Sequence record: OV032902.1
DNA length: 64,000 nucleotides
Strand: one strand, 5' to 3'
Shown piece after piece: positions 33,883 through 51,781 of the stretch. The notes beneath the pieces are model-generated. The model was not told where the DNA came from and did no database searches. It saw only the letters and a program-made list of their open reading frames with translations. A program made the translations under genes and the position numbers. Within the stretch, counting starts at the first letter, position 1. Each line of letters starts with the position of its first letter.

Positions 33883-36800
33883 ATGGCTATTATTAGAAAA
33901 GCTCTCATTAAGTTTTATTTGACTAAAGCTGAAGCAGCGACTGCAAATGAAACTCCGGGCGACATCGGTTACTTTAGTGACGGTGCCCCTGCCGGTTGGT
34001 TTGAAGCCTCAATCGATAATGGAAATCCTGCTGTCGATGGTAATACGCTACAAGGTAGTGAATCTAACCTTTACTGGAAGCGTATCGTTAATGCGGAAAC
34101 TGAAGCTCCTACTCCGGTTCTTGTTCCAGATGCTTATGCGGAAGGTACTGCTTATCAACAATACCAAATCGTTGAGTCTGGTGGCAAGCTGTACGTTTGT
34201 GATTCTGCTCACACGCCAACCGCTGCTGAAGTAACTAGCCTTGCTAAGGTTACTGAACTTGGCACGGGCGCAGCTGGTATTGCTGATGTAGTCGCTGTGG
34301 AATACAAAGCCACCGAAACATACAAAGCATTTGAGCTTGTTTACATCGGCACGGATATCTTTGTTACTTCTTCTGCGCATACTGCCGATGCAGATAACGT
34401 AACCAACAAAGACCAGCTTATCCAGCTTAATGGCGGTGGCGGTTCTTTGGATGAAGTAGTTGCAAAAGAATACGTAGCTGCTACGCTATACAAGGCATAT
34501 GAACTAGTGCGTATTGGTAGCGAAATCTTTATCTCTGGTTCAGAACACACGCCAACCGCTGGCGAAGTAGCTGACAAGTCTAAGCTTATCCCAATAAGTG
34601 AAGATAAAGATACTGGCCCTGGTGTTCATACATCAGTGGCTAACGAAACTGATTACCGTAAAGGCGATGTTTTCAAACTAGCTAACGGTATCTTCATGCT
34701 TAAGGTTGACTTCACTACTGATGCAAATGCTACTGATGCAGAAGTAATCGCACAGTGTGAAAAGCTAGCTGGTCCTGAAGCTTCTGTTCGTACTTCGTTT
34801 ACCAATAGTACTGATTACTTCAAAGGCGATTTCTTTATCTTTGATTCTGGTACTTACCGTGTTAAAGCTGACTTCCAGACCGATGCAAATGCTACTGAAG
34901 CAGAAATTATTGCAGCGTGTGATAAGCTTTCTGGCCCTACTCAGAAAACTTATGCAGGCTTCCCTGCATCAACTGCATTCAGTATCGGCGATATTGTTAC
35001 TGAAGATGACCGCAGCTATGTAGTTAAAACGGCGTTTAGTACTGGCGCGTCAGACAACACGGTCACTGATCAAGAAACTAACCTTCTACCTTTGTTCGCA
35101 GAGCATTTGGTTCCACGTGTGTATAGTAATGGCGCAGTACTTAAAGAAAACGAAATCTTTGAGTATGGCGGTAACCTTTACTTTACTCCTAACTCGGTTG
35201 ACGGTACGTCTACTAACCAAACAACTTGGGCGGAAATTGAATCAAGCTGCATCCTAGTTGCTCAGGTTCCAGTAACCGCAACTCCTGATTTCGTAGCAGC
35301 TAACACATACAACGCCAATGATGTTGTTAAATTCGACGGACTAGAATGGAAGCTTACTGGTACGCACACTGTCAATGATCCTATTGACTTGACTAACTGG
35401 TCTCGTGTTATCACAACAGGCGTTAACCGTGGTGAGCACAAAACAAACCATGTTTACTTGAAAGACGACATCGTCACAAGGAGCGGCATTGCTTATAAGG
35501 CAAACGCTAATGTGGACGACACCGTTAGTTTCGCCGAAGGATTATCAGGCGCGACCTTTATTCGCCTAGACACAGCAGTGTTCGATGGACTGTCTAATTC
35601 CAAGGTTTATATAGTAGGCGATATCGTTTCAGCCGGTACGGCATCGTATGCAGTACACACTGCTTACAAGTCTGCTGCCGCTGCTACTGAAGCAGAGCTA
35701 GCTGCTAACTCTACATTGATTGCAACCAGTATCGAAACTTACTTGCCTACATACACAAACGGTAGTGCATTGAAGAATGGTCAATTGTTCTTCTATGATG
35801 AAGCTGTTTATCGCGCAGACGCGGATAAAGATGGTACAACTGCTAGCGAAACCACATGGGCTGAAATCGAAGGCGAAATGACGTTCTTGTTTAGCTTTAA
35901 GGTTGAACCGGCTCCTGCTGCATGGGCTAAGGCTAACGCTTATGCTGTTGGCGATAAAGCCACTTATGCTGGTCAGGTTGTAGTTGCTACTGCTGCATCT
36001 GCTGCTAACGACGAGTTCTCGTATAGTGATTGGACCCGTGAATTGGATTATCCTTACAATCAGGGCGATCACGTAAACGGCCGTGCTTACATGAAGGGCG
36101 ACGTAGTCTTTATTGATAGTGTTGAGTACATTGCACGCTCTAATGTTGATTCTGATGCCGGTGCTTCCGAAATCAAACTAGGCGTGTCTTCTGACTTCTA
36201 TCGTTTGACTCCGACCACTCATAGTGATCTAGTTGCAGACACTTTATACTCTAACTTTGATATCGTTATCAAAGAAGGCATTACGTATCTTGTAACGACT
36301 CCTATTCTTACAACTAGCTCTACAACCTGGAATGACCTTGTAGCGAACATGACTGTGGTTGCAGATAACTCTGCGTATGCGGTTCGTGAATACGTTGCAG
36401 AAGAAGACCTGAAGAAGTACGAGTTTGTCGTAGAGCCCGCAACAGGTGACGTTTACGTTACAACTAGTGCTATTGCCGGCAACGCAGGTAACACATTCCA
36501 AATCGTTAAAGACAACGGCGTTCGCGTAGCTGAATCTCCAGTTACTCCTGTTCCTGACTTTGACGCTGGTGAGCTATATACAGAGAACGACGAAGTTCGT
36601 TTCGAAAGTATGGTGTACACAGCTAAAGACCAAACAGGTCGTTTAGTAAACGATGCATTTAGCCTTACTTACTTTGAGCGTAACATTCCTGCCGGATTTA
36701 AGTTCGGTGACTTCGTAGCCAACAAGTTATACCTAAACGGTGACTTTGTTACAAATGGCGGCATAGAATACAAAGTTAAAGCAACTGGTACTTTTGCCAC

Positions 36801-39800
36801 GTTAACTGAAACTAATACTACGTTTGAGCGTACAAGTACAATCTTCAAGTTTACCCTGGAAGCAGCGAAGCGTTACATCCCAGGTGACTTGCTTTACTTG
36901 ACGAGCGGTGCTTACTACGTGCGTAACGAGTTTACGACTAACAACCCTGCTGATATTGATGACCACGCAGCCGACATTTATGTCATTGCTGAGAAAGATC
37001 ATCCTCCAGTAGAAGAGTATGTTCCTACTCAAGATGGCGAAGAGTTCAAGTTGATCGTTCATAATGAAGGTCTTTACTTCATTAAGACGGCCTGGACTGC
37101 TGATGTATCTAACGCAGATAGTGCTAACTGGACCAATGATACTTTTGACAAGATCAAAGGCAACCTAGTTGAACTTGTTCCTCAGAAGAATCCTACTCCA
37201 ATTGCGTTTGTTCAGGCTGATACATACCAAGAAGACGATTATGTTTCACATGATGGTTTTAATTGGCATCGTAATGACTCTACGACTCGTAAGGGTGGTG
37301 ACGCATTCAGTCTAGATCACTTCAATCGTGAAGAAGCTGGTGGTCAAAATCGTGGTACATTTACTTCCGGTCAACACTACTTATCTGGCGATAAAGTGTT
37401 CGACAACGGAATTGAATATCGTGCTAATACATTGATCAACTACGGCGATGTAACGGTATTCGTTGAAGGTCTGGGCTTACAAGAGTTTGTTCGTATTACT
37501 CCAATCGTTCATCAAGGCTTTGCACCAGATACACTTTACATTCGTGGTGACTGGGTAATTGAAGACGGCGTTACATACTACGTGCAACCTGTGACTTTCT
37601 TTGAGTCTGGCGCAGCTGAAACACTGGCTGAATTTGAAGCACGTAATGAGGTAGAAGTGATTGCGGACCACCGCATCCTTAATCCTCGTGAGTACGTTGC
37701 CAAAGATAATGCCGAGCAAGGCGAGATCATTCAGTACCAAGGTTCCGTTTACTACGTTACTACGGCGTGGGTTTCAGATACTACGGATGCTGATGCGGCT
37801 AACCATGTTAACCATGAATGGGATGCAGTTAAGGATAAAGTCGTTGCGCTTTACCAAACACCTGCCCCAGTACTTCCGGTATTTGATGCAGCCACTGCAT
37901 ACAATGCCAATGACGAAGTTCAGGATAAATATGGTTTAGTTTGGACTCGTCGTAATGTTGCAGACGGAACAGCACAACCATTGACTGAAACTCACTGGAC
38001 GCGTAATGATGCTGACCCGCAGATCTTCGAACATATTCCTGATCGCGAGTACACATACCTGCCTAACGACAAGATTAAATACGGAACATCTTACTTCCAC
38101 TTTAATCTAGCCAATGACCTTGCTTCGGCGGATATTGATGAATGGGCTACGTGGCTAGAAGCTAACACTCGAATCGAACCTACCGGCGAGATTAAGATTG
38201 TGGCTGGCAACGGGAGTCTGACCGGACTTGAGTATGTTGCACCTGGTCAACTAGTAAGCTTCCTAACGGACGGCACGCTTAATGGCCTTCAAGGCAAGCA
38301 AGGCGAAACATACGTTATTACGTCTACGATGCGTTCTACCACTCTTAACAAGGCATACTTTGTTAAGATTGCTGAGAAAGCTAAACTGGCAACTGCATTT
38401 GATGCTACGGCGACATATGCAACTGGTGACTTAGTTACTATTGCCGAAGATAGCTTTACTTATGAGCTAACCGGTACGCACAATGTTAACGATGCGTTTA
38501 ACTTGACTAACTGGTCTCGTGTAGAACCAGCACAGCACCGTGGTGCACATAGCGATGCAGTTTACTATATCACCGGTGATAAGGTTACTAATGCTGGCAA
38601 AGAGTACGAAGCTCTTGGTCCTATTAGTAAGACAGCTTTTGCTGAAGGCATTGCAGGTAATACATTCAAGCGTGTTACTCAAAACGTTGCTGCTTCTTTA
38701 ACGGCTGACATGTTCTATGTTGAAGGCGATATCTTTAACTTGAATGGTTATGACCTAGAAGTAACTGCTGCGTTCCAAGCTGATGCTGACCCAACGTTCG
38801 CTGAGAACATTGCTAACATGCAGGCAATCAACGTAGATGAGAAATACTACTTGGCTGCTGCTGACGGCGTAGCGTTCCATGACTACAACAAGAAAGAGCA
38901 TGTGTTTATCTTCACCGAAGATCGCTCGACTGAGTTGTTTAATGGTTTCACACCTATGACTGGCGACCGCATGGTTCTTAAGCGCGACCGTACGGCTACG
39001 AACAACCCTCCAATAGCGGCTGACTTTGATATCTTCCTAGCGAAGCAAATCGAAGATGCTATTGAGCCGCATGATGATGGCACTGCTTACTTGACTGGCG
39101 ACAAAGTAACTTACCAAGGTTTTGTTTGGACTTCTACTGAAGCTCAATCGGCTCTTGTTTGGGACTTTACTAAGTGGACTCGTGACCTGCCTGGTGGTGA
39201 ACATCGCGGTACGTTCAGCAATGCTGTACACTACCGTACAGGCGACACCGTAACCCATCCTGATGATGGTGCTTTGTATGCAATCAATTCTAACGTTGAT
39301 AGCGTAGCTGCATTTAACATCGGCTCACTTGCGGCAGAATGGACGCGTGTTGGTCCTGGTATCTTCACGGATGCCTCGGTCGTGGCATGGAATACTCAGT
39401 TCTTTAAAGGCGATCGTCTATACTTCGGTAAGCAGTACCGTACTGTAACAGAAGACTTTGCGATTGGTGCTGACCCTGCCGATGGCTCTGTTCCTGAACT
39501 GGATGAAACCAAGCTTCGCATCGAAGGTCGTTGGGACCGCTCTAACGTTCGTACTGTTACGGCAGACGAGTCTGTTAGTGCAGAAGAAGTTGTTCGCTAC
39601 GGCAACAAACTTTACTTTGTGTTTGCTGACTATGTGCCAAGTGACCCTGTGGTTGCTGCCGAGCTAGAAGCGAAGATTTACGAACTCGTAAACTTTGAGT
39701 CCACTCAGCACGAAGCATACGATGCTGCCAAGATATATGCCGAAGGCGATATCGTTTCTTATCAAGACGAAATCTTCCAGCGTACTAATGATACCATTGG

Positions 39801-40938
39801 TGATGCAGGTAACTTTACTGCTGCTCGCTGGACTAAGTTGTCTGAGAAGAGTGTACGTACTGCTGGTGTTCTAGCAGACATGAATGACTGGTATGTTGGT
39901 GTTGATGACATAGTTCACTATCAAGGCATTACACTTACCGCTAAGGTAGCTCGCGGTGTTGATGAACTCAAGATTCCTTTCGATGATACTAAGTTCGATC
40001 GTGCTGGTAACTTTGTGTTTAATACGGCATTCTCTTACCTTGGCAGACGCGCTCTAATCAAAGGTGACTTTATCATTGACGGTCGTAACATGTATTTTGT
40101 TACAGCTGCTTTTGAGGTCCTTGATGGCGAGTCTTGGGATAATGCTCTTCGTACACATCAATCTAGCTTCCGCTTAGTCGGTGACTATGAGTTACTTGAT
40201 TGGCAAGCAGATACTTTCTATCGTACTGGTGACCTTGTTAAAGTACAGGGTTATGAGATGGTAGTAGTTGCTAACCATACTTCAGCTTCTGCTTGGAATA
40301 CTGGTGAGCTTCTTAAGTTTGTGTTGCGTGATCAGCCTACTTACGGCTTTACGATGGAAGCTACTGACTTCATCCCGGCTGGAACTAAGTTTGATACTAA
40401 CGGTGATGATGACTCAAGCACAGCACTGCCGTTTACTATTACTGGCACGGTTCCTTTGGCAAACATAAATCTGTTACTTCAAGTCGGTTTCCGCTTCTTT
40501 GTGAATAAGACTGATATCACAGACGCTATTGTGGTCGATGGTTCGGATGCAACGCTCTTTGATATGGGCAGTATCTTCCTTGAAGCTGGAGATGTCTTAG
40601 AGATTGCTGGTTACCAGAATGGCGAAGGTACAAGTATCGCAGAAGTAGTCCAAGGTGGTTATGCTGACCTAACAGTTACTCCTACGACAGCTAATGTTTC
40701 ATTGACGGATGCTAACAAAGGTCAAGTCATTGACATTACTGCGGCGATCACAGTAACTGCTGCTGGTGGTACTACTGGTTCTACATGGACTGTTGTTAAC
40801 CGTTCAGGCGGACAACTAGCTGTTACACTGGGTACTGGTATTACGGCGATCGGTAACGTTAACGTTCAGGATGGTACAGCGATTACTCTAGTTATGCTAG
40901 ACGCTACGACTGTGCTTATTGCTGGTGGTGTTGCTTAA
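33883..40938 (+). CDS. 2351-aa fibre/appendage protein with about 35 CBM5/12 (ChiC_BD)-like modules
   Basis: Repeated Y..GD.V...G..(Y/W)...W units counted by eye, e.g. WAKANAYAVGDKATYAG, HDDGTAYLTGDKVTYQGFVW, WQADTFYRTGDLVKVQG; tail-fibre-like C-terminal beta domain. Confidence 0.75.
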   Translation: MAIIRKALIKFYLTKAEAATANETPGDIGYFSDGAPAGWFEASIDNGNPAVDGNTLQGSESNLYWKRIVNAETEAPTPVLVPDAYAEGTAYQQYQIVESGGKLYVCDSAHTPTAAEVTSLAKVTELGTGAAGIADVVAVEYKATETYKAFELVYIGTDIFVTSSAHTADADNVTNKDQLIQLNGGGGSLDEVVAKEYVAATLYKAYELVRIGSEIFISGSEHTPTAGEVADKSKLIPISEDKDTGPGVHTSVANETDYRKGDVFKLANGIFMLKVDFTTDANATDAEVIAQCEKLAGPEASVRTSFTNSTDYFKGDFFIFDSGTYRVKADFQTDANATEAEIIAACDKLSGPTQKTYAGFPASTAFSIGDIVTEDDRSYVVKTAFSTGASDNTVTDQETNLLPLFAEHLVPRVYSNGAVLKENEIFEYGGNLYFTPNSVDGTSTNQTTWAEIESSCILVAQVPVTATPDFVAANTYNANDVVKFDGLEWKLTGTHTVNDPIDLTNWSRVITTGVNRGEHKTNHVYLKDDIVTRSGIAYKANANVDDTVSFAEGLSGATFIRLDTAVFDGLSNSKVYIVGDIVSAGTASYAVHTAYKSAAAATEAELAANSTLIATSIETYLPTYTNGSALKNGQLFFYDEAVYRADADKDGTTASETTWAEIEGEMTFLFSFKVEPAPAAWAKANAYAVGDKATYAGQVVVATAASAANDEFSYSDWTRELDYPYNQGDHVNGRAYMKGDVVFIDSVEYIARSNVDSDAGASEIKLGVSSDFYRLTPTTHSDLVADTLYSNFDIVIKEGITYLVTTPILTTSSTTWNDLVANMTVVADNSAYAVREYVAEEDLKKYEFVVEPATGDVYVTTSAIAGNAGNTFQIVKDNGVRVAESPVTPVPDFDAGELYTENDEVRFESMVYTAKDQTGRLVNDAFSLTYFERNIPAGFKFGDFVANKLYLNGDFVTNGGIEYKVKATGTFATLTETNTTFERTSTIFKFTLEAAKRYIPGDLLYLTSGAYYVRNEFTTNNPADIDDHAADIYVIAEKDHPPVEEYVPTQDGEEFKLIVHNEGLYFIKTAWTADVSNADSANWTNDTFDKIKGNLVELVPQKNPTPIAFVQADTYQEDDYVSHDGFNWHRNDSTTRKGGDAFSLDHFNREEAGGQNRGTFTSGQHYLSGDKVFDNGIEYRANTLINYGDVTVFVEGLGLQEFVRITPIVHQGFAPDTLYIRGDWVIEDGVTYYVQPVTFFESGAAETLAEFEARNEVEVIADHRILNPREYVAKDNAEQGEIIQYQGSVYYVTTAWVSDTTDADAANHVNHEWDAVKDKVVALYQTPAPVLPVFDAATAYNANDEVQDKYGLVWTRRNVADGTAQPLTETHWTRNDADPQIFEHIPDREYTYLPNDKIKYGTSYFHFNLANDLASADIDEWATWLEANTRIEPTGEIKIVAGNGSLTGLEYVAPGQLVSFLTDGTLNGLQGKQGETYVITSTMRSTTLNKAYFVKIAEKAKLATAFDATATYATGDLVTIAEDSFTYELTGTHNVNDAFNLTNWSRVEPAQHRGAHSDAVYYITGDKVTNAGKEYEALGPISKTAFAEGIAGNTFKRVTQNVAASLTADMFYVEGDIFNLNGYDLEVTAAFQADADPTFAENIANMQAINVDEKYYLAAADGVAFHDYNKKEHVFIFTEDRSTELFNGFTPMTGDRMVLKRDRTATNNPPIAADFDIFLAKQIEDAIEPHDDGTAYLTGDKVTYQGFVWTSTEAQSALVWDFTKWTRDLPGGEHRGTFSNAVHYRTGDTVTHPDDGALYAINSNVDSVAAFNIGSLAAEWTRVGPGIFTDASVVAWNTQFFKGDRLYFGKQYRTVTEDFAIGADPADGSVPELDETKLRIEGRWDRSNVRTVTADESVSAEEVVRYGNKLYFVFADYVPSDPVVAAELEAKIYELVNFESTQHEAYDAAKIYAEGDIVSYQDEIFQRTNDTIGDAGNFTAARWTKLSEKSVRTAGVLADMNDWYVGVDDIVHYQGITLTAKVARGVDELKIPFDDTKFDRAGNFVFNTAFSYLGRRALIKGDFIIDGRNMYFVTAAFEVLDGESWDNALRTHQSSFRLVGDYELLDWQADTFYRTGDLVKVQGYEMVVVANHTSASAWNTGELLKFVLRDQPTYGFTMEATDFIPAGTKFDTNGDDDSSTALPFTITGTVPLANINLLLQVGFRFFVNKTDITDAIVVDGSDATLFDMGSIFLEAGDVLEIAGYQNGEGTSIAEVVQGGYADLTVTPTTANVSLTDANKGQVIDITAAITVTAAGGTTGSTWTVVNRSGGQLAVTLGTGITAIGNVNVQDGTAITLVMLDATTVLIAGGVA

Positions 40939-42145: not shown

Positions 42146-45100
42146 ATGAGTTATGTAACTAATTTCCCTGGTGGCTTTCAAAGCTCTACAGATAAGCCTC
42201 TAGATTACCGTGCTGTGGTAGACGACATCTCAGCACTAGAAGCAGTTGTGCTTCAAACTGTTTATATCGGTCTAGTTATCTACGATAAAGCGACTGGCAA
42301 ACACTATGAGATCAAGGGTACGGATGGTACACAAGCTGGTCTTGTTTACTCTGTCTTTGGTCAAGGCAGTGATTCTGATTCTGCACTAGCCGATATCATT
42401 ACTACTCGTAATCCAACTAAGAGTGATGACGCTGACTCTTCTGAGTTTACAGTCAACGCCCTTACAAGCTGGTTAAACAAAGACACAGGTGAGCTGTTCC
42501 TTTGTACGGACAACACTGCGGGTGCAGCTAATTGGATTCGTTACGTTACCGAAGGTGACTTGACTGGTTTAACTCCTGGTAATACTTTTGTCATCGAAGA
42601 ATTAAACATCCCAGTTAATGCCCCAGCGGACAGTAATTACGAATTTAATATCAGTCTTCCAAATCTGACTGCGTATGTCAATTCAACTATAGATCTTTTC
42701 GTCAACGATGAATTGCTTGTGTCGACTCCATTAGTGATGAATACCGATGATTATGTCATTACGGCTCCATTGAAGAAAAACGATAAAGTCGAATTTCGAA
42801 TGGGTCTATCTGGCAATGTGCCTATTGAGGTTCTGGGCCTTGGTAATGGTTCAGAGGTTGCAGAATTTCTTCCAAATGGCGATATTATCTCGGCTTCGAG
42901 TGCGTCTTCCGATCCTGACATAAGAAGAATAAACACTAAAGACGGAACGATTAGTAGTGTTATTGAAACCGGGTTGCCGAGTGCTTTTATTTCGGAATCA
43001 GGCTCAATTAGATTAACTGTCGATTCAGAGGGAACTTTGTTCGCGTCTAGAAATTCCAGAACTTCCGATGAGATTTATTTTCTTAAATTAGGCAGTAATT
43101 CATGGGAAACATTAACAATACCAGAAGGAGCGATAACATGTAGATGGCTATCGATGTATGACGAAGATCATCTTTTAAATGTTGATTCGGACAATCAGCT
43201 CCTTCAAAAGATCAATAAGGTCACCGGTCAATCGTCGCCAGTCTCTAATGTTCCTGGTACGATTGCTACTAACTGGAGATCCAGATACGTAGGAAACGGC
43301 CAGCTTTTGTTCACACGAGGAACTAGCCTAGGACCTATTCTTTTTGATACGGTAAATGAAACAACACTCATAGATTTTTGGGCAACTGCCGGAGAAATCG
43401 TTTTTGGTTCGAATGAGCAGTTTTACGGTGGCGATAAAGTAGAAGATGATGTTTTCATCTTTAACACATTGAACATGGATAATCACTATTTATGCCGAAA
43501 AGGAAAATGGGAAATCGACGCAGGTCCTTTAAATAGTTCCCGCAATGTTGCTGTTTCTGACCTAGGTGTTTATTTTTATCCTGCTGCTTCGACTACATTG
43601 GCTTCTACACTGCGACTTTATTCGCATGCTGATAGCTTCCGTGCTTCGGCCTATGCGGAACCAACTGCTTACTTTGCACCTACTCTAGATCTTGCTTTTG
43701 GTATCTTAGAGACACGCGACCCGATTGAAACAGATGATTCTGCTTCCGTTACTTACGATATCGCAGTTAACCAGACTTGGAAGAATGAAACAACAGGTTC
43801 TGTGTTTGTTTGTGCGGATGCAACTCCTGGCGCAGCTGTTTGGAAGAAGTACGTAACAGAAGATGAGCTTCCAGGTAAGTCTACGCTTAACCTAATGCGC
43901 TTCCCTGAGTTAAGAGTTTCAGTTGATTTGGAAACCGCCGTTCCAGACGAAACTACACCGCATCAATTTTCAACTCTTGATCTTACGATCCCTAAAGACG
44001 GTAAATATCACTTAGGTGGTAGCTTCCCTATTTCAGGTCTTAACCTTCCTCCGATGAGTACAAGTCAAGCAGGTAGTGCTATTACTAACTTCTGTCTTGA
44101 TTTGATGTTGTTCCGCGATAGTACATTGAGTCCTCTAGTTCGTGGCGATATTTCGATCATGACTAACGACGTGACGCAGGATAACTATGACTTCTTTGGT
44201 AAGGCAAGCTTTGATGAGATCTTGGATCTTAAAGCAGGCGATGTTCTAACGTGGCAATTCTACACCACTTCAAACATCCCACCTACGGCAGATGCATTCC
44301 TGTTCATTAACCCTACAGATGGTAACTCTGTTGCGTCTCAGGGCCACAAGTCAGCTCCGTGGCTGCGTGAACTAGAAGTAGCTACTTATCTTCCTGCTGG
44401 TGATTACACGTACGGTATCAAGTCTACTCGTGACCCAGGTCCAACGGATGATGAGAACTCTACTGACTTCGCTATTGCGATTAACCAAGTATGGTTTAAC
44501 GAAACAAATGGTAAGACATTTGTTTGTCAAGACGCTACAGCGGACAATGCAGTATGGAATGCTTACGTAACAGCTGACCAAATCCCTGGCTTCCAGGATA
44601 CTCAGTATGTTTCATTGACAGATGTTACTCAATTCGCCACTGTAAGCGAAACAGCACTTCACCGTTTTGGTATTACACTAGCTGGTACCGATCTATCGGG
44701 CGCTACCCTGTGGATGACTGTTAATGGCAATGATGCTATTCAGTTTGATTTGAGTGGTCTAACGGGTGCCGGTACACGCATGTACTCTACGGACCAATTT
44801 ACGGCTCTTAACAAAGATGACGTGATTGCATTCCGTTGGGTTCCTAATGGCGCTGTTATTAGTTCGTTTGGTTTTGCTGGTGGTATTCAGCCAACTACTT
44901 ACTATGCTCCATTGAAAGACTTTGAACTAGGTATCAAGGAAACTCGTGACCCTACTCCAAATGATGACGAAAACTCTCCTGGTTTGTTTATTCAAGTAAA
45001 CCAAATCTGGCATAACGAAGCTACGGCTTCTATCTTTGTATGTACAGATGCTACTGTGGGAGCGGCTGTTTGGAAGCGTATGGTTACAGAGAATGACTTG

Positions 45101-48100
45101 CCTGGCTTTGACGATACTAGCACTTTTTCTTTGACTGGTCCAGATGATGTTTTTGTTGCTCCTCATGACAGAGACTATACGGCGGAAATCAGCATTTCTG
45201 GTTTGAATCTGGACAAAGTGGATTTCTGGGTAAAAGTAAATGACAGTGCGGTTTTCACTTTAAGTTCTTCTGATATTTCACCAGGCAATACATCGGCACT
45301 TGCAACAGTTCCTCTTTCTTTGAGTACTGGAGACTCTGTTAGTCTGGATTATACGAATAAAGCCGAACTAACTGATATTACTGGAAACCTCCCAACGTCT
45401 GCCACTGGTGCGATATATATTCTAGGTAATTACTATTACAATGTAGATCCAACAAACAACGAACTTAGACGTGCGTCAGTGAGTAATACTTCATCATGGA
45501 CTGATAACTGGACCACTCCTAACGGACAGGTTATCAACATGACTAGTGCTGATGTATACAACGCACAGTTTAGCGAAGGTTTTCTTTTTGTCATAGATAG
45601 AACTACTGACAAACTTTATCGCTTCGACAAAGAAGGCAATGCCAATATATGGGAAAACTCGGGACTAGAATCAAACACTAACCCTATATACTTTAGCTCC
45701 GAAGATCGCCAAACTTATCTATGGGATACTGCCAATAAAATCATTGAACGCTCTACGGGAAGTTCTGGTGCCTGGAGTACCGTTTATAATGCAAACAATG
45801 ACCCAAACAATACTACTAATACTCTTGATTTCATGGAAGCAGTTAACGGAGAAATTTATTTCCTTAGTCGCACCGATGGTGTACTGAAACGTGTCGTAAA
45901 TACTAACCTGTCAGTAGACGTAGGCACGGTGGAAAATCCAGCTGAAGTAATTGGGTCACTCACTTTCGGCTTTGCGGCCGAAGAAATGAATCAATTTATT
46001 TTTGGAGATAGAAGTGGAGATAAACTTGTCACGTATAACTACGTGACCGGAGAATGGGCTTACGAGTCATACTATACGGATGGCAATTATCGCTTAGAGG
46101 CACTTCCCGCTGGCCTGCACTCTTTCGGTCGCTTATTCTTTGATAGCGACTTAGAACGATTATTCCTGGTAGATAACTTCGGTAAACTTACATGGCTAAC
46201 TGAGGGATATAATTTTGGCGGCATGTCGCGAGCTAGAAGTTTCGATGAAGGCATTGCAGTGTTTTACGATACTTTGTCGCAACCTGGTGATACATATTAC
46301 CGTGCAGACTTTGGTGTAATCACGGGAATTACCGTTTCTTCTAAGTCAGAACTTCGTGGTACGTATATCCCTACGGACCAATTCGAATTAGGTATTGTTA
46401 CTGATCGTGACCCTACTGAAACGGATGATGCTGATTCAACTGAGTTCTTCGTTGTTCAAAACCAATACTGGCAGAACACCGCCAATGGTTACACATGGAT
46501 CTGTAAAGACGCTACGCCTGGCGCAGCTGTTTGGAAGAAGCATGTAACAGAAGATGAAATCACAGGTATTGACTTTACTGAGTCTTATGCTCTGGTGATT
46601 CCTGAAACCGTTAATCCTACGACAGCTGTAGAAAGTGACCCTGTCACGATTACGGAAGACAAGACATATCGATTTGATATTCGTTCTCGTATGCAGGTTC
46701 CTCGTGGTAAATCAGTTACTGTTGAGGTATTGAAGAATGATGCAGTTGTATGGTCTAATACTCAGACTACGTATAACTACTCTGATTCAGTAGAACTTCC
46801 AGTGGTTACAGACGACATCGTTAAACTTCGTGCTACTTTGTCTGATACAAACCGCTGGCATAACTCAATGACTAACATTACTGGTCCTGCTGTTACATTC
46901 GGCGATAGTCGTGGTGCTGCTGCAACTCGTGACTTTGTAATGATGGTTGAGTCTAGTAATAACAGTATTCTGTTAGCTGGACGTGACGACGAGTGGGTTG
47001 ATGTCTCGAACGAAGCACTTGCTCCTACATGGTCACAGGTATATGGTATCACAGCCGACGAAGAATCGTTCTATGTTATCGACCGTGGTCTAGATCAAAT
47101 CTGGCAACGTCGTAACGGTGGCCTATGGTCACAGATCGATGGTCATACATTTACTGATCTGTTTGACATTGCTTATGCACAAGGCAAGCTTTACTGTCTT
47201 GATGAGGCATCTAATAGCGGCGGTAGCTCAATTGAAGTTTACGATATTGAGAATGATAGTTGGAGTACGCTTACTTATACTGGCCTTCCTACGATAGCCA
47301 ATGCTCGTGGTATGACAGTTGACCCTGATACAGGTGATGTTTTCTTGTATGACACTGGTGCGACCAATAAAGAAATCTTCAAGTTTACAGCTGCGACGCA
47401 GACCTGGGCAGCCTGGGCAATGACTAACCGTGGTAACCCTAACCATTATCCTTTCCACATGACTATTCATGACGGTAAGCTATGGTACGGTGACATGGAT
47501 GAAACTAACGTTATTCGTACTATTCGTACGATTGACTTAGTAACAGAAGTTCATGAAGACTGGGGTGCTGCTAACGGACAGAGTGATGATCTAAGTCGTC
47601 ATATTCGTGGTATTGCTTTCCGTGATGGCAAGCTCTACGGTGGTGACTTGTTGAATGATACTATTTGGTCATTCGAGACATACAAAGTCGGTCCAGCATC
47701 GGCTGGTTTCGGTACAGCTCCTCGTGCGCATTACTTGCCTGCAAATGAAATCAATGTCGGTATTAAGGAAACTCGTGATCCTACGGAAAACGATGATTCT
47801 TCAAGTACTGATTACGATATCAAGGTTAACCAGCTATGGTTGAATGAAACCAATGGTTCTTTCTGGATCTGTAAGAAAGATACTTTGGGCGCGGCAGTTT
47901 GGGCTCGTTTCTCTACTGATACAGAAGAGATCCCGCCTATCGGTCAGCGTCTGGATGTCGAAGGTGGTCGCCTAATCTCCAATAACGGTGTTTACTGGGC
48001 AAACGATGCATCTAGTGCAGGTACAGCGGCTAACCAAGCAGTTGTTGCAGAAGACGTTACTTGGTTCATGTTCCATTCTTGGGACGATGACATGATCGAA

Positions 48101-48994
48101 GGTCGCGGTATGCGTATCAGTCTTCCGGCAGGTAACCTAGATGAAACTGATAATGTGTACATCAATTTAGATATTGAAACATATTCTCCGCTTCTAGTTT
48201 ATCGTACTGGTCCATTTAGTCCGCGCTGGAAAGTATCGGACATGATGGGTAGTATTATCGAGCTTCGTCCTGCTAACAGTGGCACGGGTTGGGTAGCCAA
48301 TGAAACACGTACAGCTAGTCGCGATGACTTTGGTCCATTGCGCAAAGTAGACGGCAATACCCGTTTACGTAGTACGGCTCGCGACCCTCGTGAGATGCAC
48401 GTTGATGAAATCTTAACCAAGCGTCATGTTGATTCATACCGTAAAGTTAAGACAGGTACATTTACTGGTGAAGCTACAACAGAGTCACTTGTAGAGTTAT
48501 TTTACGCTAAGTTTAATGACGACTTTGGTATTTCCTTTGGTGCATTTGTTGAAGGTAACCAGGGCGGATTTGTCCCTGTTGTTCAGATGCGTGACTATGT
48601 TTCTAGCGGTAACTATGGCTGTCAAAGCTTCTTCCGATGTAATAGTTCGGGCGGAGACGGTTCTTCTCAGAACAAAGTCTTTATGATTGAGTTAGAGAAA
48701 AGTAGTTCACTAACTAAGAACCGTATACGTACATTTGGTGGCGACGACATGGATGGCGTAACAGACGTTGCTGATTTAGATGGCGTCATGCACCCTTATG
48801 GTTGTACTGGACACTTCGAATTCCAGATTTTCACCATTAGTACTAGTGGCCTGGAATACCAAGCAGCTAAAGGTTCAATCCGTTTTGCTTCTTTTGATGC
48901 AGCAAGGGATCAGAACTCACAAGTTGTTCAATACATTGCGGAAATCGAGTACATTACTCGTGAGCAAGATATCCAGGATGATACTAGCTGGTAA
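42146..48994 (+). CDS. 2282-aa modular tail fibre/receptor-binding protein
   Basis: N-terminal F.....PLD.R.VV..Y.G head; six copies of TRDPT..DD...VNQ.W.NE..G..F.C.DAT.GAAVW separating variable beta-propeller and jelly-roll-like domains. Confidence 0.75.
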   Translation: MSYVTNFPGGFQSSTDKPLDYRAVVDDISALEAVVLQTVYIGLVIYDKATGKHYEIKGTDGTQAGLVYSVFGQGSDSDSALADIITTRNPTKSDDADSSEFTVNALTSWLNKDTGELFLCTDNTAGAANWIRYVTEGDLTGLTPGNTFVIEELNIPVNAPADSNYEFNISLPNLTAYVNSTIDLFVNDELLVSTPLVMNTDDYVITAPLKKNDKVEFRMGLSGNVPIEVLGLGNGSEVAEFLPNGDIISASSASSDPDIRRINTKDGTISSVIETGLPSAFISESGSIRLTVDSEGTLFASRNSRTSDEIYFLKLGSNSWETLTIPEGAITCRWLSMYDEDHLLNVDSDNQLLQKINKVTGQSSPVSNVPGTIATNWRSRYVGNGQLLFTRGTSLGPILFDTVNETTLIDFWATAGEIVFGSNEQFYGGDKVEDDVFIFNTLNMDNHYLCRKGKWEIDAGPLNSSRNVAVSDLGVYFYPAASTTLASTLRLYSHADSFRASAYAEPTAYFAPTLDLAFGILETRDPIETDDSASVTYDIAVNQTWKNETTGSVFVCADATPGAAVWKKYVTEDELPGKSTLNLMRFPELRVSVDLETAVPDETTPHQFSTLDLTIPKDGKYHLGGSFPISGLNLPPMSTSQAGSAITNFCLDLMLFRDSTLSPLVRGDISIMTNDVTQDNYDFFGKASFDEILDLKAGDVLTWQFYTTSNIPPTADAFLFINPTDGNSVASQGHKSAPWLRELEVATYLPAGDYTYGIKSTRDPGPTDDENSTDFAIAINQVWFNETNGKTFVCQDATADNAVWNAYVTADQIPGFQDTQYVSLTDVTQFATVSETALHRFGITLAGTDLSGATLWMTVNGNDAIQFDLSGLTGAGTRMYSTDQFTALNKDDVIAFRWVPNGAVISSFGFAGGIQPTTYYAPLKDFELGIKETRDPTPNDDENSPGLFIQVNQIWHNEATASIFVCTDATVGAAVWKRMVTENDLPGFDDTSTFSLTGPDDVFVAPHDRDYTAEISISGLNLDKVDFWVKVNDSAVFTLSSSDISPGNTSALATVPLSLSTGDSVSLDYTNKAELTDITGNLPTSATGAIYILGNYYYNVDPTNNELRRASVSNTSSWTDNWTTPNGQVINMTSADVYNAQFSEGFLFVIDRTTDKLYRFDKEGNANIWENSGLESNTNPIYFSSEDRQTYLWDTANKIIERSTGSSGAWSTVYNANNDPNNTTNTLDFMEAVNGEIYFLSRTDGVLKRVVNTNLSVDVGTVENPAEVIGSLTFGFAAEEMNQFIFGDRSGDKLVTYNYVTGEWAYESYYTDGNYRLEALPAGLHSFGRLFFDSDLERLFLVDNFGKLTWLTEGYNFGGMSRARSFDEGIAVFYDTLSQPGDTYYRADFGVITGITVSSKSELRGTYIPTDQFELGIVTDRDPTETDDADSTEFFVVQNQYWQNTANGYTWICKDATPGAAVWKKHVTEDEITGIDFTESYALVIPETVNPTTAVESDPVTITEDKTYRFDIRSRMQVPRGKSVTVEVLKNDAVVWSNTQTTYNYSDSVELPVVTDDIVKLRATLSDTNRWHNSMTNITGPAVTFGDSRGAAATRDFVMMVESSNNSILLAGRDDEWVDVSNEALAPTWSQVYGITADEESFYVIDRGLDQIWQRRNGGLWSQIDGHTFTDLFDIAYAQGKLYCLDEASNSGGSSIEVYDIENDSWSTLTYTGLPTIANARGMTVDPDTGDVFLYDTGATNKEIFKFTAATQTWAAWAMTNRGNPNHYPFHMTIHDGKLWYGDMDETNVIRTIRTIDLVTEVHEDWGAANGQSDDLSRHIRGIAFRDGKLYGGDLLNDTIWSFETYKVGPASAGFGTAPRAHYLPANEINVGIKETRDPTENDDSSSTDYDIKVNQLWLNETNGSFWICKKDTLGAAVWARFSTDTEEIPPIGQRLDVEGGRLISNNGVYWANDASSAGTAANQAVVAEDVTWFMFHSWDDDMIEGRGMRISLPAGNLDETDNVYINLDIETYSPLLVYRTGPFSPRWKVSDMMGSIIELRPANSGTGWVANETRTASRDDFGPLRKVDGNTRLRSTARDPREMHVDEILTKRHVDSYRKVKTGTFTGEATTESLVELFYAKFNDDFGISFGAFVEGNQGGFVPVVQMRDYVSSGNYGCQSFFRCNSSGGDGSSQNKVFMIELEKSSSLTKNRIRTFGGDDMDGVTDVADLDGVMHPYGCTGHFEFQIFTISTSGLEYQAAKGSIRFASFDAARDQNSQVVQYIAEIEYITREQDIQDDTSW

Positions 48995-49006: not shown

Positions 49007-49044
49007 CCTCTCTCCTTCGGGAGAGAGGCTTTCTTTTTCTTTTG
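49007..49044 (+). terminator. Rho-independent terminator
   Basis: CCTCTCTCC-TTCG-GGAGAGAGG followed by CTTTCTTTTT. Confidence 0.85.
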
Positions 49045-49057: not shown

Positions 49058-49090
49058 GTCCGATGACCTCGAATTCAAAAGGAGATAAAG

Positions 49091-50764
49091 ATGTTCTTTA
49101 CTATCTTACCTGGCATAATTCACCAGGATAAAGTTATCCGAGAAAACAGTGGTGTTTTACCCACTACGCCGGATGCTGTAGATACTGCGGTACTAGCAAT
49201 TGATACTTCCGCAGATACCGGTACCCAAGGTGACTGGACTACAAGCGCAGCAGTAATTGTATTCGAAGCTACAAATGTAGATAGTCGTGCAACTGCTGTA
49301 GAACTTCACAGTGACACTGCAAAGATAGGTGACTTTACCGAAGCAAATGGTCGCTACCTATATAGTTATAATAACCCTCAGGATGATTCCAAGGTTAGCT
49401 TCAAGATTGTAGTCAAAACACCGGACGGTGATACTGAAACCGCCCTGCAAGAAGTTACTATGGAAGCTCCTGCTCCTGTGGCAAACTATAGCTATATTAA
49501 CTATTACAGTTCTTGGGCTACTAGTTGGTTTAATGCCGCTAATGCTGTTGACCCTAATCATCGTCGTATGGCAAATACTCCAGGTTACTTTAGTGATATC
49601 ATGATTGCTTTCGTTCGTCCTAATATGACCTTCGATAAAACAGCCCCAGACATCACAAGAGTCGCTACAGGCCTGGATTATCCTAATACTGGACCTACTC
49701 CTCATGAAGGTCTTAAGGATGACGTAGAGAAAGCACAGGCCAAAGGACAGAAAGTTCTTGTCTCCGTTGGTGGTGCTACTTATGGTCGTCCTGATATTTC
49801 TGATGCATGGCAAAACATGTATGATGAAGCTAAGTACATTGCTACGGCAGGTACGGGTTCTATTAACCGAGTTAACACACCAACAATGCAATCAATGATT
49901 GAGTTTATTGAGTACTTCAATCTAGATGGCATTGACTTGGACTTTGAGGATGACCCGGCATGGTGGGACGGTCATACAGTTGGTACTACACGATGGCAAA
50001 AGTATCTAGATGTTTATTATCATCTATTGATGTTTAACCATTATGTTGCCGACAGAGCTGCTGCTATCCTAGGCAAGCCTATGGAGAAAGGTACGGCTTG
50101 TTGGTCTACTGGCTGGCACGTTACTCCGGATACCAATGCCGATGTTGCAACTCCAAATGCGTCACATGGTCTTACTTCTGTGTGGGGTGGGCGTGCAGGT
50201 CGTGAGCGTGCAATGTTCGGTGGCTTTACTCATCCGGAACTAGGTGCGGTTAATGCTCGTAACTTTGTGACTAAGTACATTAACATGTCTTATGACTTTG
50301 GTCCACTTGGTAGCTACGCTGATGACACAGAAGCTTTAACTAACGACGTAACATACGACCCAATCAATGTTTATGTTGAGGCTCGTGAAATAGTGACAGA
50401 CATTGATTCAGTTATGACTGTAGGTATCTGTCCTGAGCCTTTCGGATGGCAAGCCGATGGTTCTAAGATGATGGTTAAGGACGCAGACTGTGCTCCTTCT
50501 GGTAACCATCGTACCCGATTATATCGTGACGGCTACAACCGCGTAATCGACAAGCCATTCTCTGCTGAGAACCTGGCCACTCGATTCTTGGATGTAGTTG
50601 GTAATAATGTAAACGATGGCTTTATTTTGTGGGCTGGTTACAAAGTTGCTGGTACTTATACTTATAACGGTACTCCTTCTGCTAACGCTACAACGGCGTC
50701 AAAAGAAATCGCACGAGTACTTGACCTCGCCGATAAAGACAACTCGCACGATATTCATACGTAA
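49091..50764 (+). CDS. GH18 chitinase-like glycoside hydrolase with N-terminal Ig/PKD-like domain
   Basis: YYSSW, IMIAFVRP, KVLVSVGG, catalytic LDGIDLDFE (DxxDxDxE intact), INMSYD, GFILWA; AGGAG RBS; no signal peptide. Confidence 0.9.
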   Translation: MFFTILPGIIHQDKVIRENSGVLPTTPDAVDTAVLAIDTSADTGTQGDWTTSAAVIVFEATNVDSRATAVELHSDTAKIGDFTEANGRYLYSYNNPQDDSKVSFKIVVKTPDGDTETALQEVTMEAPAPVANYSYINYYSSWATSWFNAANAVDPNHRRMANTPGYFSDIMIAFVRPNMTFDKTAPDITRVATGLDYPNTGPTPHEGLKDDVEKAQAKGQKVLVSVGGATYGRPDISDAWQNMYDEAKYIATAGTGSINRVNTPTMQSMIEFIEYFNLDGIDLDFEDDPAWWDGHTVGTTRWQKYLDVYYHLLMFNHYVADRAAAILGKPMEKGTACWSTGWHVTPDTNADVATPNASHGLTSVWGGRAGRERAMFGGFTHPELGAVNARNFVTKYINMSYDFGPLGSYADDTEALTNDVTYDPINVYVEAREIVTDIDSVMTVGICPEPFGWQADGSKMMVKDADCAPSGNHRTRLYRDGYNRVIDKPFSAENLATRFLDVVGNNVNDGFILWAGYKVAGTYTYNGTPSANATTASKEIARVLDLADKDNSHDIHT

Positions 50765-50768
50765 CGAT

Positions 50769-51242
50769 ATGATGAAGCGAGTCCGGTCTAGTTGCGGATT
50801 AGATTCCAGGGCAAAGGGCAAATATAGAGCAACGGAATATAACGCCGAACTCTTACTTGTTGCCCTGGTTCAATCCATCATTGACAAGAAGATAACTAAG
50901 ATAAGAAACATAGGTATCTTTAAGTATGATGAAAACAAAAAAGTGACAGGCTTTGTTCCGTATAACAATCTGTTAAATAGACTTAACGGAAAGAATACAA
51001 AGAACAATATGACTAAGCCCCGATTAGCTTCAAAAGAGCTTAATTATTTAAAAGCCCAAACTGGTCTAATGGATGATGATATCTATCTGACGATTGCATC
51101 TCTTAACACATACATTATGTTGGAGTTAAGGGCGCATCAGACAGTAACGATGCCCAACGTAGGTACGATATCTGTAAACATAATTGCCCCCATCAATGAA
51201 GGAGACTTAGCCCAAGTCGACTTTATGTTTGAGGCAGCTTAA
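50769..51242 (+). CDS. Tandem HU-like domain protein, paralog of 51286-51741
   Basis: Start moved to ATG 50769; KIRNIGIFKY and VTMPNVGTISV; shares G.DSRA.GK...TEYN..LL with its neighbour. Confidence 0.55.
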   Translation: MMKRVRSSCGLDSRAKGKYRATEYNAELLLVALVQSIIDKKITKIRNIGIFKYDENKKVTGFVPYNNLLNRLNGKNTKNNMTKPRLASKELNYLKAQTGLMDDDIYLTIASLNTYIMLELRAHQTVTMPNVGTISVNIIAPINEGDLAQVDFMFEAA

Positions 51243-51285: not shown

Positions 51286-51741
51286 ATGTTAAGACAAGTA
51301 TCCCGACAAATCGGCACAGATAGCCGAGCACAAGGTAAGTTTAAACCTACCGAATATAATACAGCACTGCTCGTAGAAGCTTTTTTCGATGCTGTTATAA
51401 AAGAAGAGATCACGGAGATACCAGGCGTAGGAAGATTTACGTACGATAGCTCTGGAAAGATCACTCGATTTTCTCCCGTCAGTTCATTCAGTAAACACTT
51501 TCTCAACAACACACGTGTTATGTCAACACATGCATTTGATGAAAATGAGATCGCTATACTGGCAAATAAAACCGGCTTGCTCCGCGATGACATAGAACTT
51601 GCTCTATCGTCACTCACAACATACATGCTAGAACAGCTCGCAGACCATCATGAAATAATGATACCTAATATAGGAAAAATATCCTTCAGCATTATCGTTA
51701 CTTCTAGGCCCCGTGCTACGTTCGAATTTGAAGAAGCGTAA
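51286..51741 (+). CDS. Tandem HU-like domain protein, paralog of 50769-51242
   Basis: Start ATG 51286 (GAGGAG RBS); EIPGVGRFTY and IMIPNIGKISF. Confidence 0.55.
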   Translation: MLRQVSRQIGTDSRAQGKFKPTEYNTALLVEAFFDAVIKEEITEIPGVGRFTYDSSGKITRFSPVSSFSKHFLNNTRVMSTHAFDENEIAILANKTGLLRDDIELALSSLTTYMLEQLADHHEIMIPNIGKISFSIIVTSRPRATFEFEEA

Positions 51742-51747: not shown

Positions 51748-51781
51748 CCCTCTGCCTCAGGGCAGGGGGATTATCTTTTTT
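51748..51781 (+). terminator. Rho-independent terminator
   Basis: CCCTCTGCC-TCAG-GGCAGGGGG followed by ATTATCTTTTT. Confidence 0.75.

What the first reader, a model, noticed from the sequence alone, without database searches (positions are those of the whole stretch)
49091..50764. Catalytically intact GH18 chitinase inside the virion appendage block
Seen: a complete GH18 motif set including DGIDLDFE, an N-terminal Ig/PKD-like domain, no signal peptide, its own terminator/late-type promoter unit, and a position directly after the fibre genes. Established: GH18 DxxDxDxE enzymes hydrolyse chitin or related GlcNAc polymers, and vibrios colonise chitin. Inference: a virion-borne or lysis-released chitinase working with the CBM-rich appendage could let the phage dock on, move along or release from chitin surfaces, or cut GlcNAc-based biofilm matrix. 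I do not know this as a described phage system.
Basis: partly seen in the sequence, partly recalled or inferred. Interest (0 to 1): 0.8.

Follow-up and report, generated by a model that had tools for sequence, protein, structure and literature searches.

The report
Phage GH18 chitinase-like enzyme gene
A jumbo, nucleus-forming Vibrio phage carries a chitinase-family (GH18) enzyme gene with an intact active site and no export signal, next to giant fibre-like genes; it belongs to a small, previously unrecognised phage clade, and whether it rides on the virion is still unproven.

Summary
The window is Vibrio phage vB_VpaM_sm033 (OV032902.1, record 248001-312000), a phiKZ-like, nucleus-forming jumbo phage. 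ORF 49091-50764 (557 aa, annotated "hypothetical") is a GH18 glycosidase. A profile search and a Foldseek search both return only GH18 chitinases. All catalytic motifs are present and are conserved across a 66-member subfamily. pN/pS against the nearest relative is 0.115/0.70.

Cellular relatives carry signal peptides and chitin-binding modules; the phage copies carry neither.

Confirmed:
- the motif set;
- the lack of a signal peptide;
- the upstream terminator;
- the position after two giant proteins, one with at least 19 CBM5/12-like repeats.

Not confirmed:
- the Ig/PKD-like N-terminal domain, which has no match and only a low-confidence all-beta model;
- a late promoter;
- a private transcription unit, because the gene runs on into two HU-like genes.

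New findings:
- The order giant gene then GH18 recurs in two metagenomic relatives.
- A 14-residue N-terminal tag is kept while the catalytic module is swapped (84% versus 27.5% identity at equal backbone distance).
- Two phiKZ-like contigs carry catalytically dead copies.
- BONAISHI and Yong phages carry the gene away from fibre genes.

Best reading (0.35): a virion-attached chitin-type hydrolase. Release at lysis is nearly as likely. It is a new member of known kinds and of moderate interest.

The parts
49007..49028 (+). Intrinsic-terminator hairpin (9 bp stem, 6 GC pairs) followed by a T-run. It ends the giant-gene transcript just upstream of the GH18 gene.
   Evidence: The hairpin 3' arm and T-run are conserved upstream of the GH18 gene in L010 and L011 and absent in L004 and L005.
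49079..49085 (+). Ribosome-binding site AAGGAGA, 5 nt before the ATG.
   Evidence: an equivalent site is conserved in the relatives.
49091..50764 (+). GH18 glycosidase gene, 557 aa; SM033_00302 / CAH0448126.1, annotated 'hypothetical protein'.
49091..49132 (+). Conserved N-terminal tag (aa 1-14), followed by a Pro/Gly/Ser-rich linker. The tag is shared with P0002, P0003 and P0041 even where the catalytic domains are only 27.5% identical.
   Evidence: Codons differ at synonymous sites, so the conservation is at the peptide level.
49169..49465 (+). Insert of about 100 aa (aa ~27-125) found only in sm033. It is predicted all-beta at low confidence and its family is unknown.
49469..50761 (+). GH18 (beta/alpha)8 catalytic domain (aa 127-557). 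All eight barrel strands are modelled.
49925..49948 (+). Catalytic DxxDxDxE motif, DGIDLDFE (aa 279-286).
50285..50296 (+). MSYD motif (aa 399-402), the Tyr/Asp pair typical of GH18 active sites.
50769..51242 (+). Unannotated 157-aa ORF, a paralogue of the HU-like gene that follows it. It starts 5 nt after the GH18 stop and is probably co-transcribed.
   Evidence: 36% identity over 160 aa, E = 5e-33; weak HU-family hits
51286..51741 (+). HU-like DNA-binding protein gene (SM033_00303); last gene of the apparent unit.
51748..51769 (+). First + strand terminator downstream of the GH18 gene (9 bp stem, 7 GC pairs).
42146..48994 (+). Giant 2282-aa repeat protein, fibre-like and unannotated as to function, immediately upstream. 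It is homologous to the giants that abut the GH18 gene in L004 and L005. Its first ~70 aa match BONAISHI ORF145 and Yong proteins.
   Evidence: no Pfam, PHROG or PDB family
33883..40938 (+). 2351-aa protein annotated as tail fibre, with at least 19 CBM5/12-like repeats.
   Evidence: CBM_5_12 109.5 bits; phrog_9851 tail fibre, E = 3e-17

Best explanation
The gene encodes a catalytically competent GH18 (beta/alpha)8-barrel glycosidase. It belongs to a clade so far seen only in jumbo Vibrio-type phages.

The protein is made in the cytoplasm of the infected cell without any export signal. It can therefore meet a beta-1,4-GlcNAc polymer, most likely chitin or chito-oligomers, only outside the cell.

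My preferred route in the sm033 lineage is on the virion. The conserved 14-residue N-terminal tag plus linker would dock the enzyme onto the giant fibre-like protein encoded just upstream, or onto a partner of it. The CBM5/12-rich fibre would hold the particle on chitin-type surfaces where vibrios live, and the enzyme would cut the polymer. Particles could then penetrate to, or detach from, chitin-bound cells and matrix.

Shown: family, fold, intact motifs, purifying selection, absence of a signal peptide, synteny, and module swapping behind a fixed tag.
Inferred: substrate, virion attachment, and ecological role.
For: Enzyme:
- GH18 by profile (E = 4e-8) and by fold (50 of 50 top hits).
- All motif residues are present and conserved.
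- pN 0.115 against pS 0.70 versus L004.

Likely substrate class:
- Cellular subfamily members carry ChitinaseA_N, CBM2, CBM5/12 and fn3 modules and pass the Pfam GH18 cut-off.
- The fibre-repeat profile hits the CBM modules of those enzymes.
- The BONAISHI copy has a sub-threshold CBM_5_12 hit at its N-terminus.

Action outside the cell:
- Phage copies lack the signal peptides that cellular relatives have.
- A separate endolysin exists at 23603-24514.

Virion link:
- The GH18 gene abuts a homologous giant gene in L004 (13 nt gap) and L005 (6 nt gap).
- The downstream gene order is the same in L004 and L010.
- At equal backbone distance (helicase 65-66% identical), the GH18 module is 84% identical in L004 but 27.5% in L010, while the N-terminal tag is kept. 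This pattern is typical of exchangeable virion enzymes on a fixed anchor.
- A virion-packed protein annotated as chitinase is reported for jumbo phage XacN1.
Against: - No virion proteome exists for sm033, BONAISHI or the Yong phages.
- In sm033, L010 and L011 a strong terminator separates the giant gene from GH18. In sm033 the gene appears co-transcribed with two HU-like genes.
- In BONAISHI the homologue follows ribonucleotide-reductase genes. In Yong XC32 and in L008 it is a lone + strand gene among - strand genes.
- A 14-residue tag is short for an anchor. The loose N-terminal motif it shares with the giant occurs genome-wide at chance frequency: 3 of 351 ORFs against about 2 expected.
- The fold is a TIM barrel, not a trimeric beta-helix tailspike.
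- Chitin binding by the fibre repeats is not tested.
- The core tail and baseplate genes lie about 170 kb away.
Confidence: 0.35

Rival explanations
1. The protein is a soluble chitinase released at lysis. It accumulates in the cytoplasm late in infection and is freed when the cell bursts. It then digests the chitin or chito-oligomer matrix around the lysed cell, which loosens progeny from particles. This resembles the way baculovirus ChiA acts after host death. The enzyme is not attached to the virion.
For: - There is no signal peptide.
- A terminator separates the gene from the fibre gene, and the operon partners are not structural.
- The BONAISHI, Yong and L008 copies lie outside structural blocks.
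- BONAISHI-type copies carry their own N-terminal module with a weak CBM_5_12 signal, as free chitinases do.
- Baculovirus GH18 ChiA is among the fold hits.
Against: - It does not explain why a short N-terminal peptide is conserved at the protein level while the catalytic module is replaced.
- It does not explain why the gene abuts the giant gene in L004 and L005.
- Catalytically dead copies (P0009, P0013) make little sense for an enzyme released as a common good.
Confidence: 0.3
2. The enzyme acts on the host's own envelope rather than on chitin. It would be a virion-associated or lysis-associated hydrolase for a GlcNAc-containing capsule, biofilm polysaccharide or peptidoglycan, that is, a depolymerase or an accessory lysin.
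For: - The position next to receptor-binding-type giant genes and the module swapping fit a host-specificity determinant.
- GH18 includes enzymes that act on GlcNAc-containing glycans other than chitin; weak EndoS-type TIM-barrel hits occur in relatives.
- Reviews state that jumbo phages carry extra virion-borne wall hydrolases (PMC5348500).
Against: - The nearest structures and the cellular subfamily members are chitinase-type with chitin-binding modules.
- sm033 has a conventional endolysin with a peptidoglycan-binding region.
- The GH18 protein has no peptidoglycan-binding module, and no lysis genes lie beside it.
- The 84% identity to L004, when the backbone is only 65% identical, argues for a conserved substrate rather than a strain-variable one.
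Confidence: 0.15
3. The protein's main role is not catalysis. It could be a GlcNAc-polymer-binding (lectin-like) protein, structural or regulatory, or a drifting accessory gene with no important function.
For: - Two members of the phage clade (P0009 in L009, P0013 in L008) have lost the DxxDxDxE and MxYD residues yet remain full-length ORFs.
- GH18 is known to include non-catalytic lectins; mammalian chitinase-like proteins appear among the fold hits.
Against: - The sm033, L004, L005, L010, L011, BONAISHI and Yong copies keep every catalytic residue.
- pN/pS is low.
Confidence: 0.08

Closest known systems
Bacterial GH18 chitinases (top fold and profile hits: Chitiniphilus shinanonensis ChiL 6kxn/6kst, Chromobacterium violaceum 4txg, Serratia marcescens ChiA, Bacillus circulans ChiA1 1itx)
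   Same: (beta/alpha)8 barrel, the SxGG, DxxDxDxE and MxYD motifs, and the C-terminal Trp.
   Different: - Only 11-16% identity to the solved structures.
- The protein's own Pfam score is just under the cut-off.
- It has no signal peptide and no recognised CBM on the sm033 protein.
- It is encoded by a lytic jumbo phage.
Unnamed bacterial GH18 subfamily (P0010-P0070, e.g. Crenobacter cavernae WP_129213165.1, Burkholderiales and Opitutae metagenome-assembled genomes)
   Same: Full-length catalytic-domain homology (E = 1e-30 to 1e-57) and the same conserved residues.
   Different: The cellular members are secreted or lipoproteins with ChitinaseA_N, CBM2, CBM5/12 and fn3 modules. The phage copies form their own cluster in a rough neighbour-joining tree.
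Baculovirus ChiA (AcMNPV, PDB 5dez)
   Same: A virus-encoded GH18 chitinase that acts on extracellular chitin after host death to aid dissemination. It is a fold hit at E = 1e-7.
   Different: It comes from an insect virus, its target is host cuticle, it is a different GH18 subfamily, and it carries targeting signals.
Virion-packed 'chitinase' ORF272 of Xanthomonas jumbo phage XacN1 (PMC5852040)
   Same: A jumbo phage in which a protein annotated as chitinase was detected in virions by proteomics and proposed to help reach the host through its matrix.
   Different: It was not retrieved as a relative: tblastn finds the sm033 protein in only 6 phage records, all Vibrio. Its family was not checked here, and the host and lineage differ.
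Prophage-encoded chitinase of a deep-sea Pseudomonas phage (PMC11788074; described as GH19 in 10.1101/2024.12.20.629349)
   Same: A phage gene that gives chitin degradation in a marine setting.
   Different: It is GH19 rather than GH18, sits on a temperate phage, is expressed from the lysogen and benefits host growth. sm033 is a nucleus-forming lytic-type jumbo phage.
Tailspike and tail-fibre depolymerases with a conserved N-terminal anchor and exchangeable enzymatic C-terminus (general phage knowledge, recalled and not tested here)
   Same: A fixed N-terminal peptide, a swapped catalytic module, and a position next to fibre genes.
   Different: The fold is a monomer-type TIM barrel rather than a trimeric beta-helix. 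The tag is only about 14 residues long. Virion presence has not been shown.

Membership tests
Glycoside hydrolase family 18 (GH18) | (beta/alpha)8 TIM-barrel fold | tested here: met
   In the AlphaFold model, aa 131-557 are mostly pLDDT 80-97 and all eight strands are present. The top 50 Foldseek PDB hits are all GH18, probability 1.00.
Glycoside hydrolase family 18 (GH18) | DxxDxDxE catalytic motif at the end of strand 4 | tested here: met
   DGIDLDFE at aa 279-286. D282 is conserved in 62/66, D284 in 65/66 and E286 in 63/66 members.
Glycoside hydrolase family 18 (GH18) | SxGG (strand 3), the MxYD Tyr/Asp pair (strand 6) and the strand-8 Trp | tested here: met
   S225, G227 and G228; M399, Y401 and D402; W514.
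Glycoside hydrolase family 18 (GH18) | Pfam PF00704 score above the gathering cut-off (29.6 bits) | tested here: inconclusive
   The sm033 protein scores 28.7 bits and matches only the first third of the model. Relatives P0002-P0005 and P0008 score 31.6-38.4 bits. The family profile against PDB sequences gives E = 4e-8.
Glycoside hydrolase family 18 (GH18) | Retaining, substrate-assisted hydrolysis of beta-1,4-GlcNAc linkages | not testable with these tools
   Activity and substrate are inferred from motifs and from the modules of relatives.
Virion-associated depolymerase / tailspike | Physical presence in the virion | not testable with these tools
   No proteome was found for sm033, BONAISHI or the Yong phages.
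Virion-associated depolymerase / tailspike | Recognisable N-terminal anchor domain or trimeric beta-helix body | tested here: not met
   There is no PHROG family and no Pfam or PDB match for aa 1-135. The body is a TIM barrel. Only a 14-aa conserved tag is present.
Virion-associated depolymerase / tailspike | Encoded within or beside tail-fibre genes in related genomes | tested here: inconclusive
   Met in sm033, L004 and L005. Not met in BONAISHI, Yong, L008 and L009.
Phage endolysin | Known lysin family or peptidoglycan-binding module, with lysis-cassette neighbours | tested here: not met
   The GH18 protein matches no lysin family. A separate endolysin lies at 23603-24514 (phrog_181, E = 3e-51, with a peptidoglycan-binding-type C-terminus).
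CBM5/12 chitin-binding module (neighbouring 2351-aa fibre) | Pfam PF02839 above the cut-off (26.2 bits), in repeated copies | tested here: met
   109.5 bits. An iterated profile finds 19 repeats. Binding to chitin itself was not tested.

The most novel reading that the evidence does not exclude
Nucleus-forming jumbo vibriophages carry a two-part chitin-surface system. One part is a giant fibre studded with CBM5/12-like repeats that holds the particle on chitin. The other is a virion-docked GH18 enzyme, exchangeable behind a fixed N-terminal tag, that cuts the polymer. Particles could then search, move through or leave chitin particles where their hosts live. This would be a chitin counterpart of phage adherence to mucus. 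The catalytically dead copies in some lineages would serve as pure binders.
Probability: 0.15. Interest if true: 0.8.

Novelty: new member of a known kind. Interest (0 to 1): 0.45.

Why it matters
Chitin particles are the main marine habitat of vibrios, and it is not known how their phages deal with that surface.

GH18 genes are rare in viral catalogues: 14 of 1.43 million soil viral genes, against 381 GH19 (bioRxiv 10.1101/2024.12.20.629349). The sm033 protein matches no PHROG family.

This report shows a selected, catalytically intact GH18 clade shared by two lineages of jumbo vibriophages. It was published as 'hypothetical' in BONAISHI and sits beside a fibre rich in CBM5/12 repeats. That gives a concrete candidate for a phage-chitin interaction.

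It also gives a testable structural prediction, a short N-terminal docking tag carrying swappable enzyme modules. If the protein turns out to be only a lysis-released enzyme, it is an ordinary accessory gene.

Tried and rejected
- PHROGs and NCBIfam scans of the GH18 protein returned nothing.
- A phmmer search of the single sequence against PDB sequences was only marginal (E = 0.078). A family profile was needed.
- N-terminal insert (aa ~27-125):
  - Pfam, PDB-sequence and phage tblastn searches found no relative.
  - BLASTP against all window ORFs found no paralogue, so the insert is not copied from the neighbouring giants.
  - The single-sequence AlphaFold model has pLDDT 50, and its Foldseek search gave no hit below E = 0.3.
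  - Chance-level matches (E = 0.14-0.9) to an enterotoxin B-chain family were judged noise. In keeping with the rules they were not pursued, and no comparator was fetched.
- IMG/VR scan with the family alignment found no relative.
- The JGI metagenome scan found only distant cellular GH18 genes, 25-34% identical. The close relatives come only from SRA-derived assemblies.
- The fibre-repeat profile did not hit the BONAISHI/Yong-type N-terminal domains or any other fetched locus. Co-occurrence of GH18 with CBM arrays across phages could therefore not be tested.
- The N-terminal motif 'M, 1-7 residues, hydrophobic, P, G', shared by GH18 and the giant, occurs in 3 of 351 ORFs genome-wide against about 2 expected, so I rejected it as evidence.
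- The endolysin hypothesis is rejected because a separate endolysin exists.
- Recent horizontal transfer between sm033 and L004 is rejected as the reason for their 84% identity, because synonymous sites are saturated.
- The giants have no relatives among PDB sequences.
- Literature searches found no virion proteome for sm033, BONAISHI or Yong and no described phage GH18 or chitin-docking system.
Full report
SOURCE
The window is identical to Vibrio phage vB_VpaM_sm033, OV032902.1 (320,253 bp), record positions 248001-312000. The record annotates a nuclear shell protein, several split RNA-polymerase beta genes, a head maturation protease and a tail sheath. It is therefore a phiKZ-like, nucleus-forming jumbo phage. 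The target ORF is SM033_00302, annotated 'hypothetical protein'.

THE OBSERVATION
ORF 49091-50764 (+) encodes 557 aa behind an AAGGAGA ribosome-binding site.

The motifs are present as described. DGIDLDFE is at aa 279-286, SVGG at 225-228, MSYD at 399-402 and Trp at 514.

The family assignment rests on three lines of evidence:
- The protein's own Pfam GH18 score is 28.7 bits, against a cut-off of 29.6. Five of its eight closest relatives pass the cut-off.
- A profile of the eight relatives finds PDB GH18 chitinases at E = 4e-8.
- An AlphaFold model has confident catalytic-domain geometry, and its top 50 Foldseek PDB hits are all GH18 at probability 1.00.

A profile search of 1.84 billion representative proteins found 499 relatives, 62 of them at E <= 1e-30. 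In a 66-member alignment of that subfamily the catalytic Asp, Asp, Glu, Tyr and Asp are kept in 62-65 sequences. Against the nearest relative (L004) pN is 0.115 and pS is 0.70, so the protein is under strong purifying selection.

'Catalytically intact GH18' therefore stands at the sequence and fold level.

SIGNAL PEPTIDE
The phage copies have no hydrophobic N-terminal core; their maximum 12-residue hydropathy is 1.5 or less. Cellular relatives show classical Sec or lipoprotein signals with values above 2. This claim stands.

N-TERMINAL DOMAIN
Residues ~27-125 are an insert present only in sm033. The insert has no Pfam, PDB-sequence or phage relative and no paralogue in the window. Its model is all-beta but has pLDDT 50, and there is no significant fold hit. 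'Ig/PKD-like' is neither supported nor excluded.

TRANSCRIPTION UNIT
The upstream terminator at 49007-49028 is real and strong. It is conserved upstream of the gene in L010 and L011. No sigma-70-type promoter follows it, and promoters of this phage type cannot be judged with the scan available.

The gene does not stand alone downstream. An unannotated 157-aa ORF starts 5 nt after its stop. That ORF is a paralogue (E = 5e-33) of the next, HU-like gene. The first + strand terminator comes only at 51748-51769.

NEIGHBOURHOOD
Upstream lie two giant genes:
- A 2351-aa protein annotated as tail fibre, with a PHROG tail-fibre match at E = 3e-17, a CBM_5_12 score of 109.5 bits and at least 19 repeats.
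- A 2282-aa repeat protein with no known family.

Downstream lie the HU-like pair, a deoxyribonucleotidase, DprA, a helicase, and then another giant ORF. The core baseplate and tail genes are about 170 kb away in the record. The gene therefore sits at the edge of an accessory block of giant proteins, not inside the tail module.

RELATIVES
Only six of 50,697 phage records hold a homologue: sm033, BONAISHI and four Yong phages. BFVD, the viral predicted-structure library, has one close match. BONAISHI ORF238 was published as hypothetical.

SRA-derived contigs add an sm033-like lineage:
- L004: 84% identical.
- L011: 69% identical.
- L005: 49% identical.
- L010: 27.5% identical.

In L004 and L005 the gene abuts a giant gene with gaps of 13 and 6 nt. 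That giant is homologous to the sm033 2282-aa protein. L004 and L010 share the downstream gene order.

In BONAISHI the gene follows ribonucleotide-reductase genes. In Yong XC32 and L008 it is a lone + strand gene among - strand genes. A rough neighbour-joining tree groups the phage copies together.

Two phiKZ-like contigs (L008, L009) carry full-length copies that have lost the catalytic residues.

MODULARITY
sm033, L004, L011 and L010 share a 14-residue N-terminal peptide, followed by a Pro/Gly/Ser-rich linker. The codons differ at synonymous sites, so the peptide itself is what is conserved.

At the same backbone distance (helicase 65-66% identical), the catalytic module is 84% identical in L004 but 27.5% in L010. 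This pattern, a fixed tag carrying a swapped enzyme module, is what exchangeable virion enzymes show. It is suggestive, not proof.

MECHANISM
The protein is a retaining GH18 hydrolase in all recognisable respects.

Its cellular relatives are secreted enzymes decorated with chitin-type binding modules. The fibre's repeat profile recognises those same modules. A chitin-type beta-1,4-GlcNAc polymer is thus the most likely substrate.

The protein has no export signal, and the phage has its own endolysin at 23603-24514. The enzyme must therefore leave the cell either on the virion or at lysis.

I assign these probabilities:
- Virion attachment through the N-terminal tag: 0.35.
- Release at lysis: 0.30.
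- A host-envelope glycan target: 0.15.
- A mainly binding or dispensable role: 0.08.
The remainder is unassigned.

COMPARISON WITH KNOWN SYSTEMS AND NOVELTY
The closest known things are:
- bacterial GH18 chitinases, which share the fold and motifs at 11-16% identity;
- baculovirus GH18 ChiA, a viral chitinase acting after host death;
- the virion-packed protein annotated as chitinase in phage XacN1;
- a prophage GH19 chitinase;
- tailspike depolymerases, which share the architecture logic only.

It is a new member of known kinds: a phage-borne glycosidase of a family that is rare in phages, forming a small unrecognised clade. Interest is moderate. The chitin-docking reading would be notable but rests on inference.

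RULE CHECK
All sequence evidence in this report comes from tool outputs. I fetched the other parts of this bacteriophage record piecewise, only to scan N-termini and read the annotation.

Noticed in passing
window 50769-51242 (+): A 157-aa ORF not annotated in OV032902.1. It is a paralogue (36% identity, E = 5e-33) of the adjacent HU-like gene at 51286-51741, making a tandem pair of HU-like DNA-binding genes. It starts 5 nt after the GH18 stop and has no obvious ribosome-binding site.
   Followed up: partly
window 57427-64000 (+), continuing to record end (L031:2428-17254): An ORF of at least 4942 codons stays open from record 305427 to the last base of the linear record. It is not annotated in GenBank. 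It matches repeat PHROGs of unknown function, and its homologue in L004 is at least 3735 aa. The record starts with another 2508-aa gene, so the giant block spans the record ends.
   Followed up: partly
L008:10001-11734 and L009:2941-4590: Full-length GH18-like genes in phiKZ-like metagenomic contigs have lost the DxxDxDxE and MxYD residues. They are probably non-catalytic, lectin-like derivatives. The L008 copy is flanked by genes with weak phiKZ inner-body-protein hits.
   Followed up: partly
window 42146-42360 (+): The first ~70 aa of the 2282-aa giant are 46-48% identical to the N-terminus of BONAISHI ORF145 (262 aa) and to Yong proteins. These are exactly the six phage records that also hold the GH18 gene. 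The region is a candidate shared virion-attachment domain.
   Followed up: partly
window 23603-24514 (+): Endolysin: phrog_181 at E = 3e-51, plus a hit to a PHROG named 'chitinase' and a peptidoglycan-binding-type C-terminus. This is the phage's conventional lysin and is separate from the GH18 gene.
   Followed up: partly
window 48500-52000, and upstream of 30605, 51824, 53247 and 55772: GC-rich hairpins followed by T-runs recur directly upstream of gene starts. There are 11 terminator-like sites in 3.5 kb against 2.7 expected. The spacers after the hairpins upstream of 49091 and 55772 share a short TTAAAT-containing element that could be a phage promoter.
   Followed up: no
window ~18090-18130 and ~27285-27325: The upstream regions of the genes at 18185 and 27380 share an AT-rich element (GAAAAGAT ... 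TCTATATA). It may be a second promoter class.
   Followed up: no
L027:19620-22950 (record 69620-72950) and L002:8491-13573: The ribonucleotide-reductase alpha gene is split into two CDSs. In sm033 an HNH endonuclease gene lies between them. BONAISHI likewise has split alpha and beta subunit genes with an HNH gene between the beta pieces. This looks like a homing-endonuclease or intron-type insertion.
   Followed up: no
L010 and L011 (both from sample SRR24799356): Two very different GH18 alleles (P0041 and P0003, about 29% identical catalytic domains) carry nearly the same N-terminal tag and the same upstream terminator. They co-occur in one sample.
   Followed up: partly
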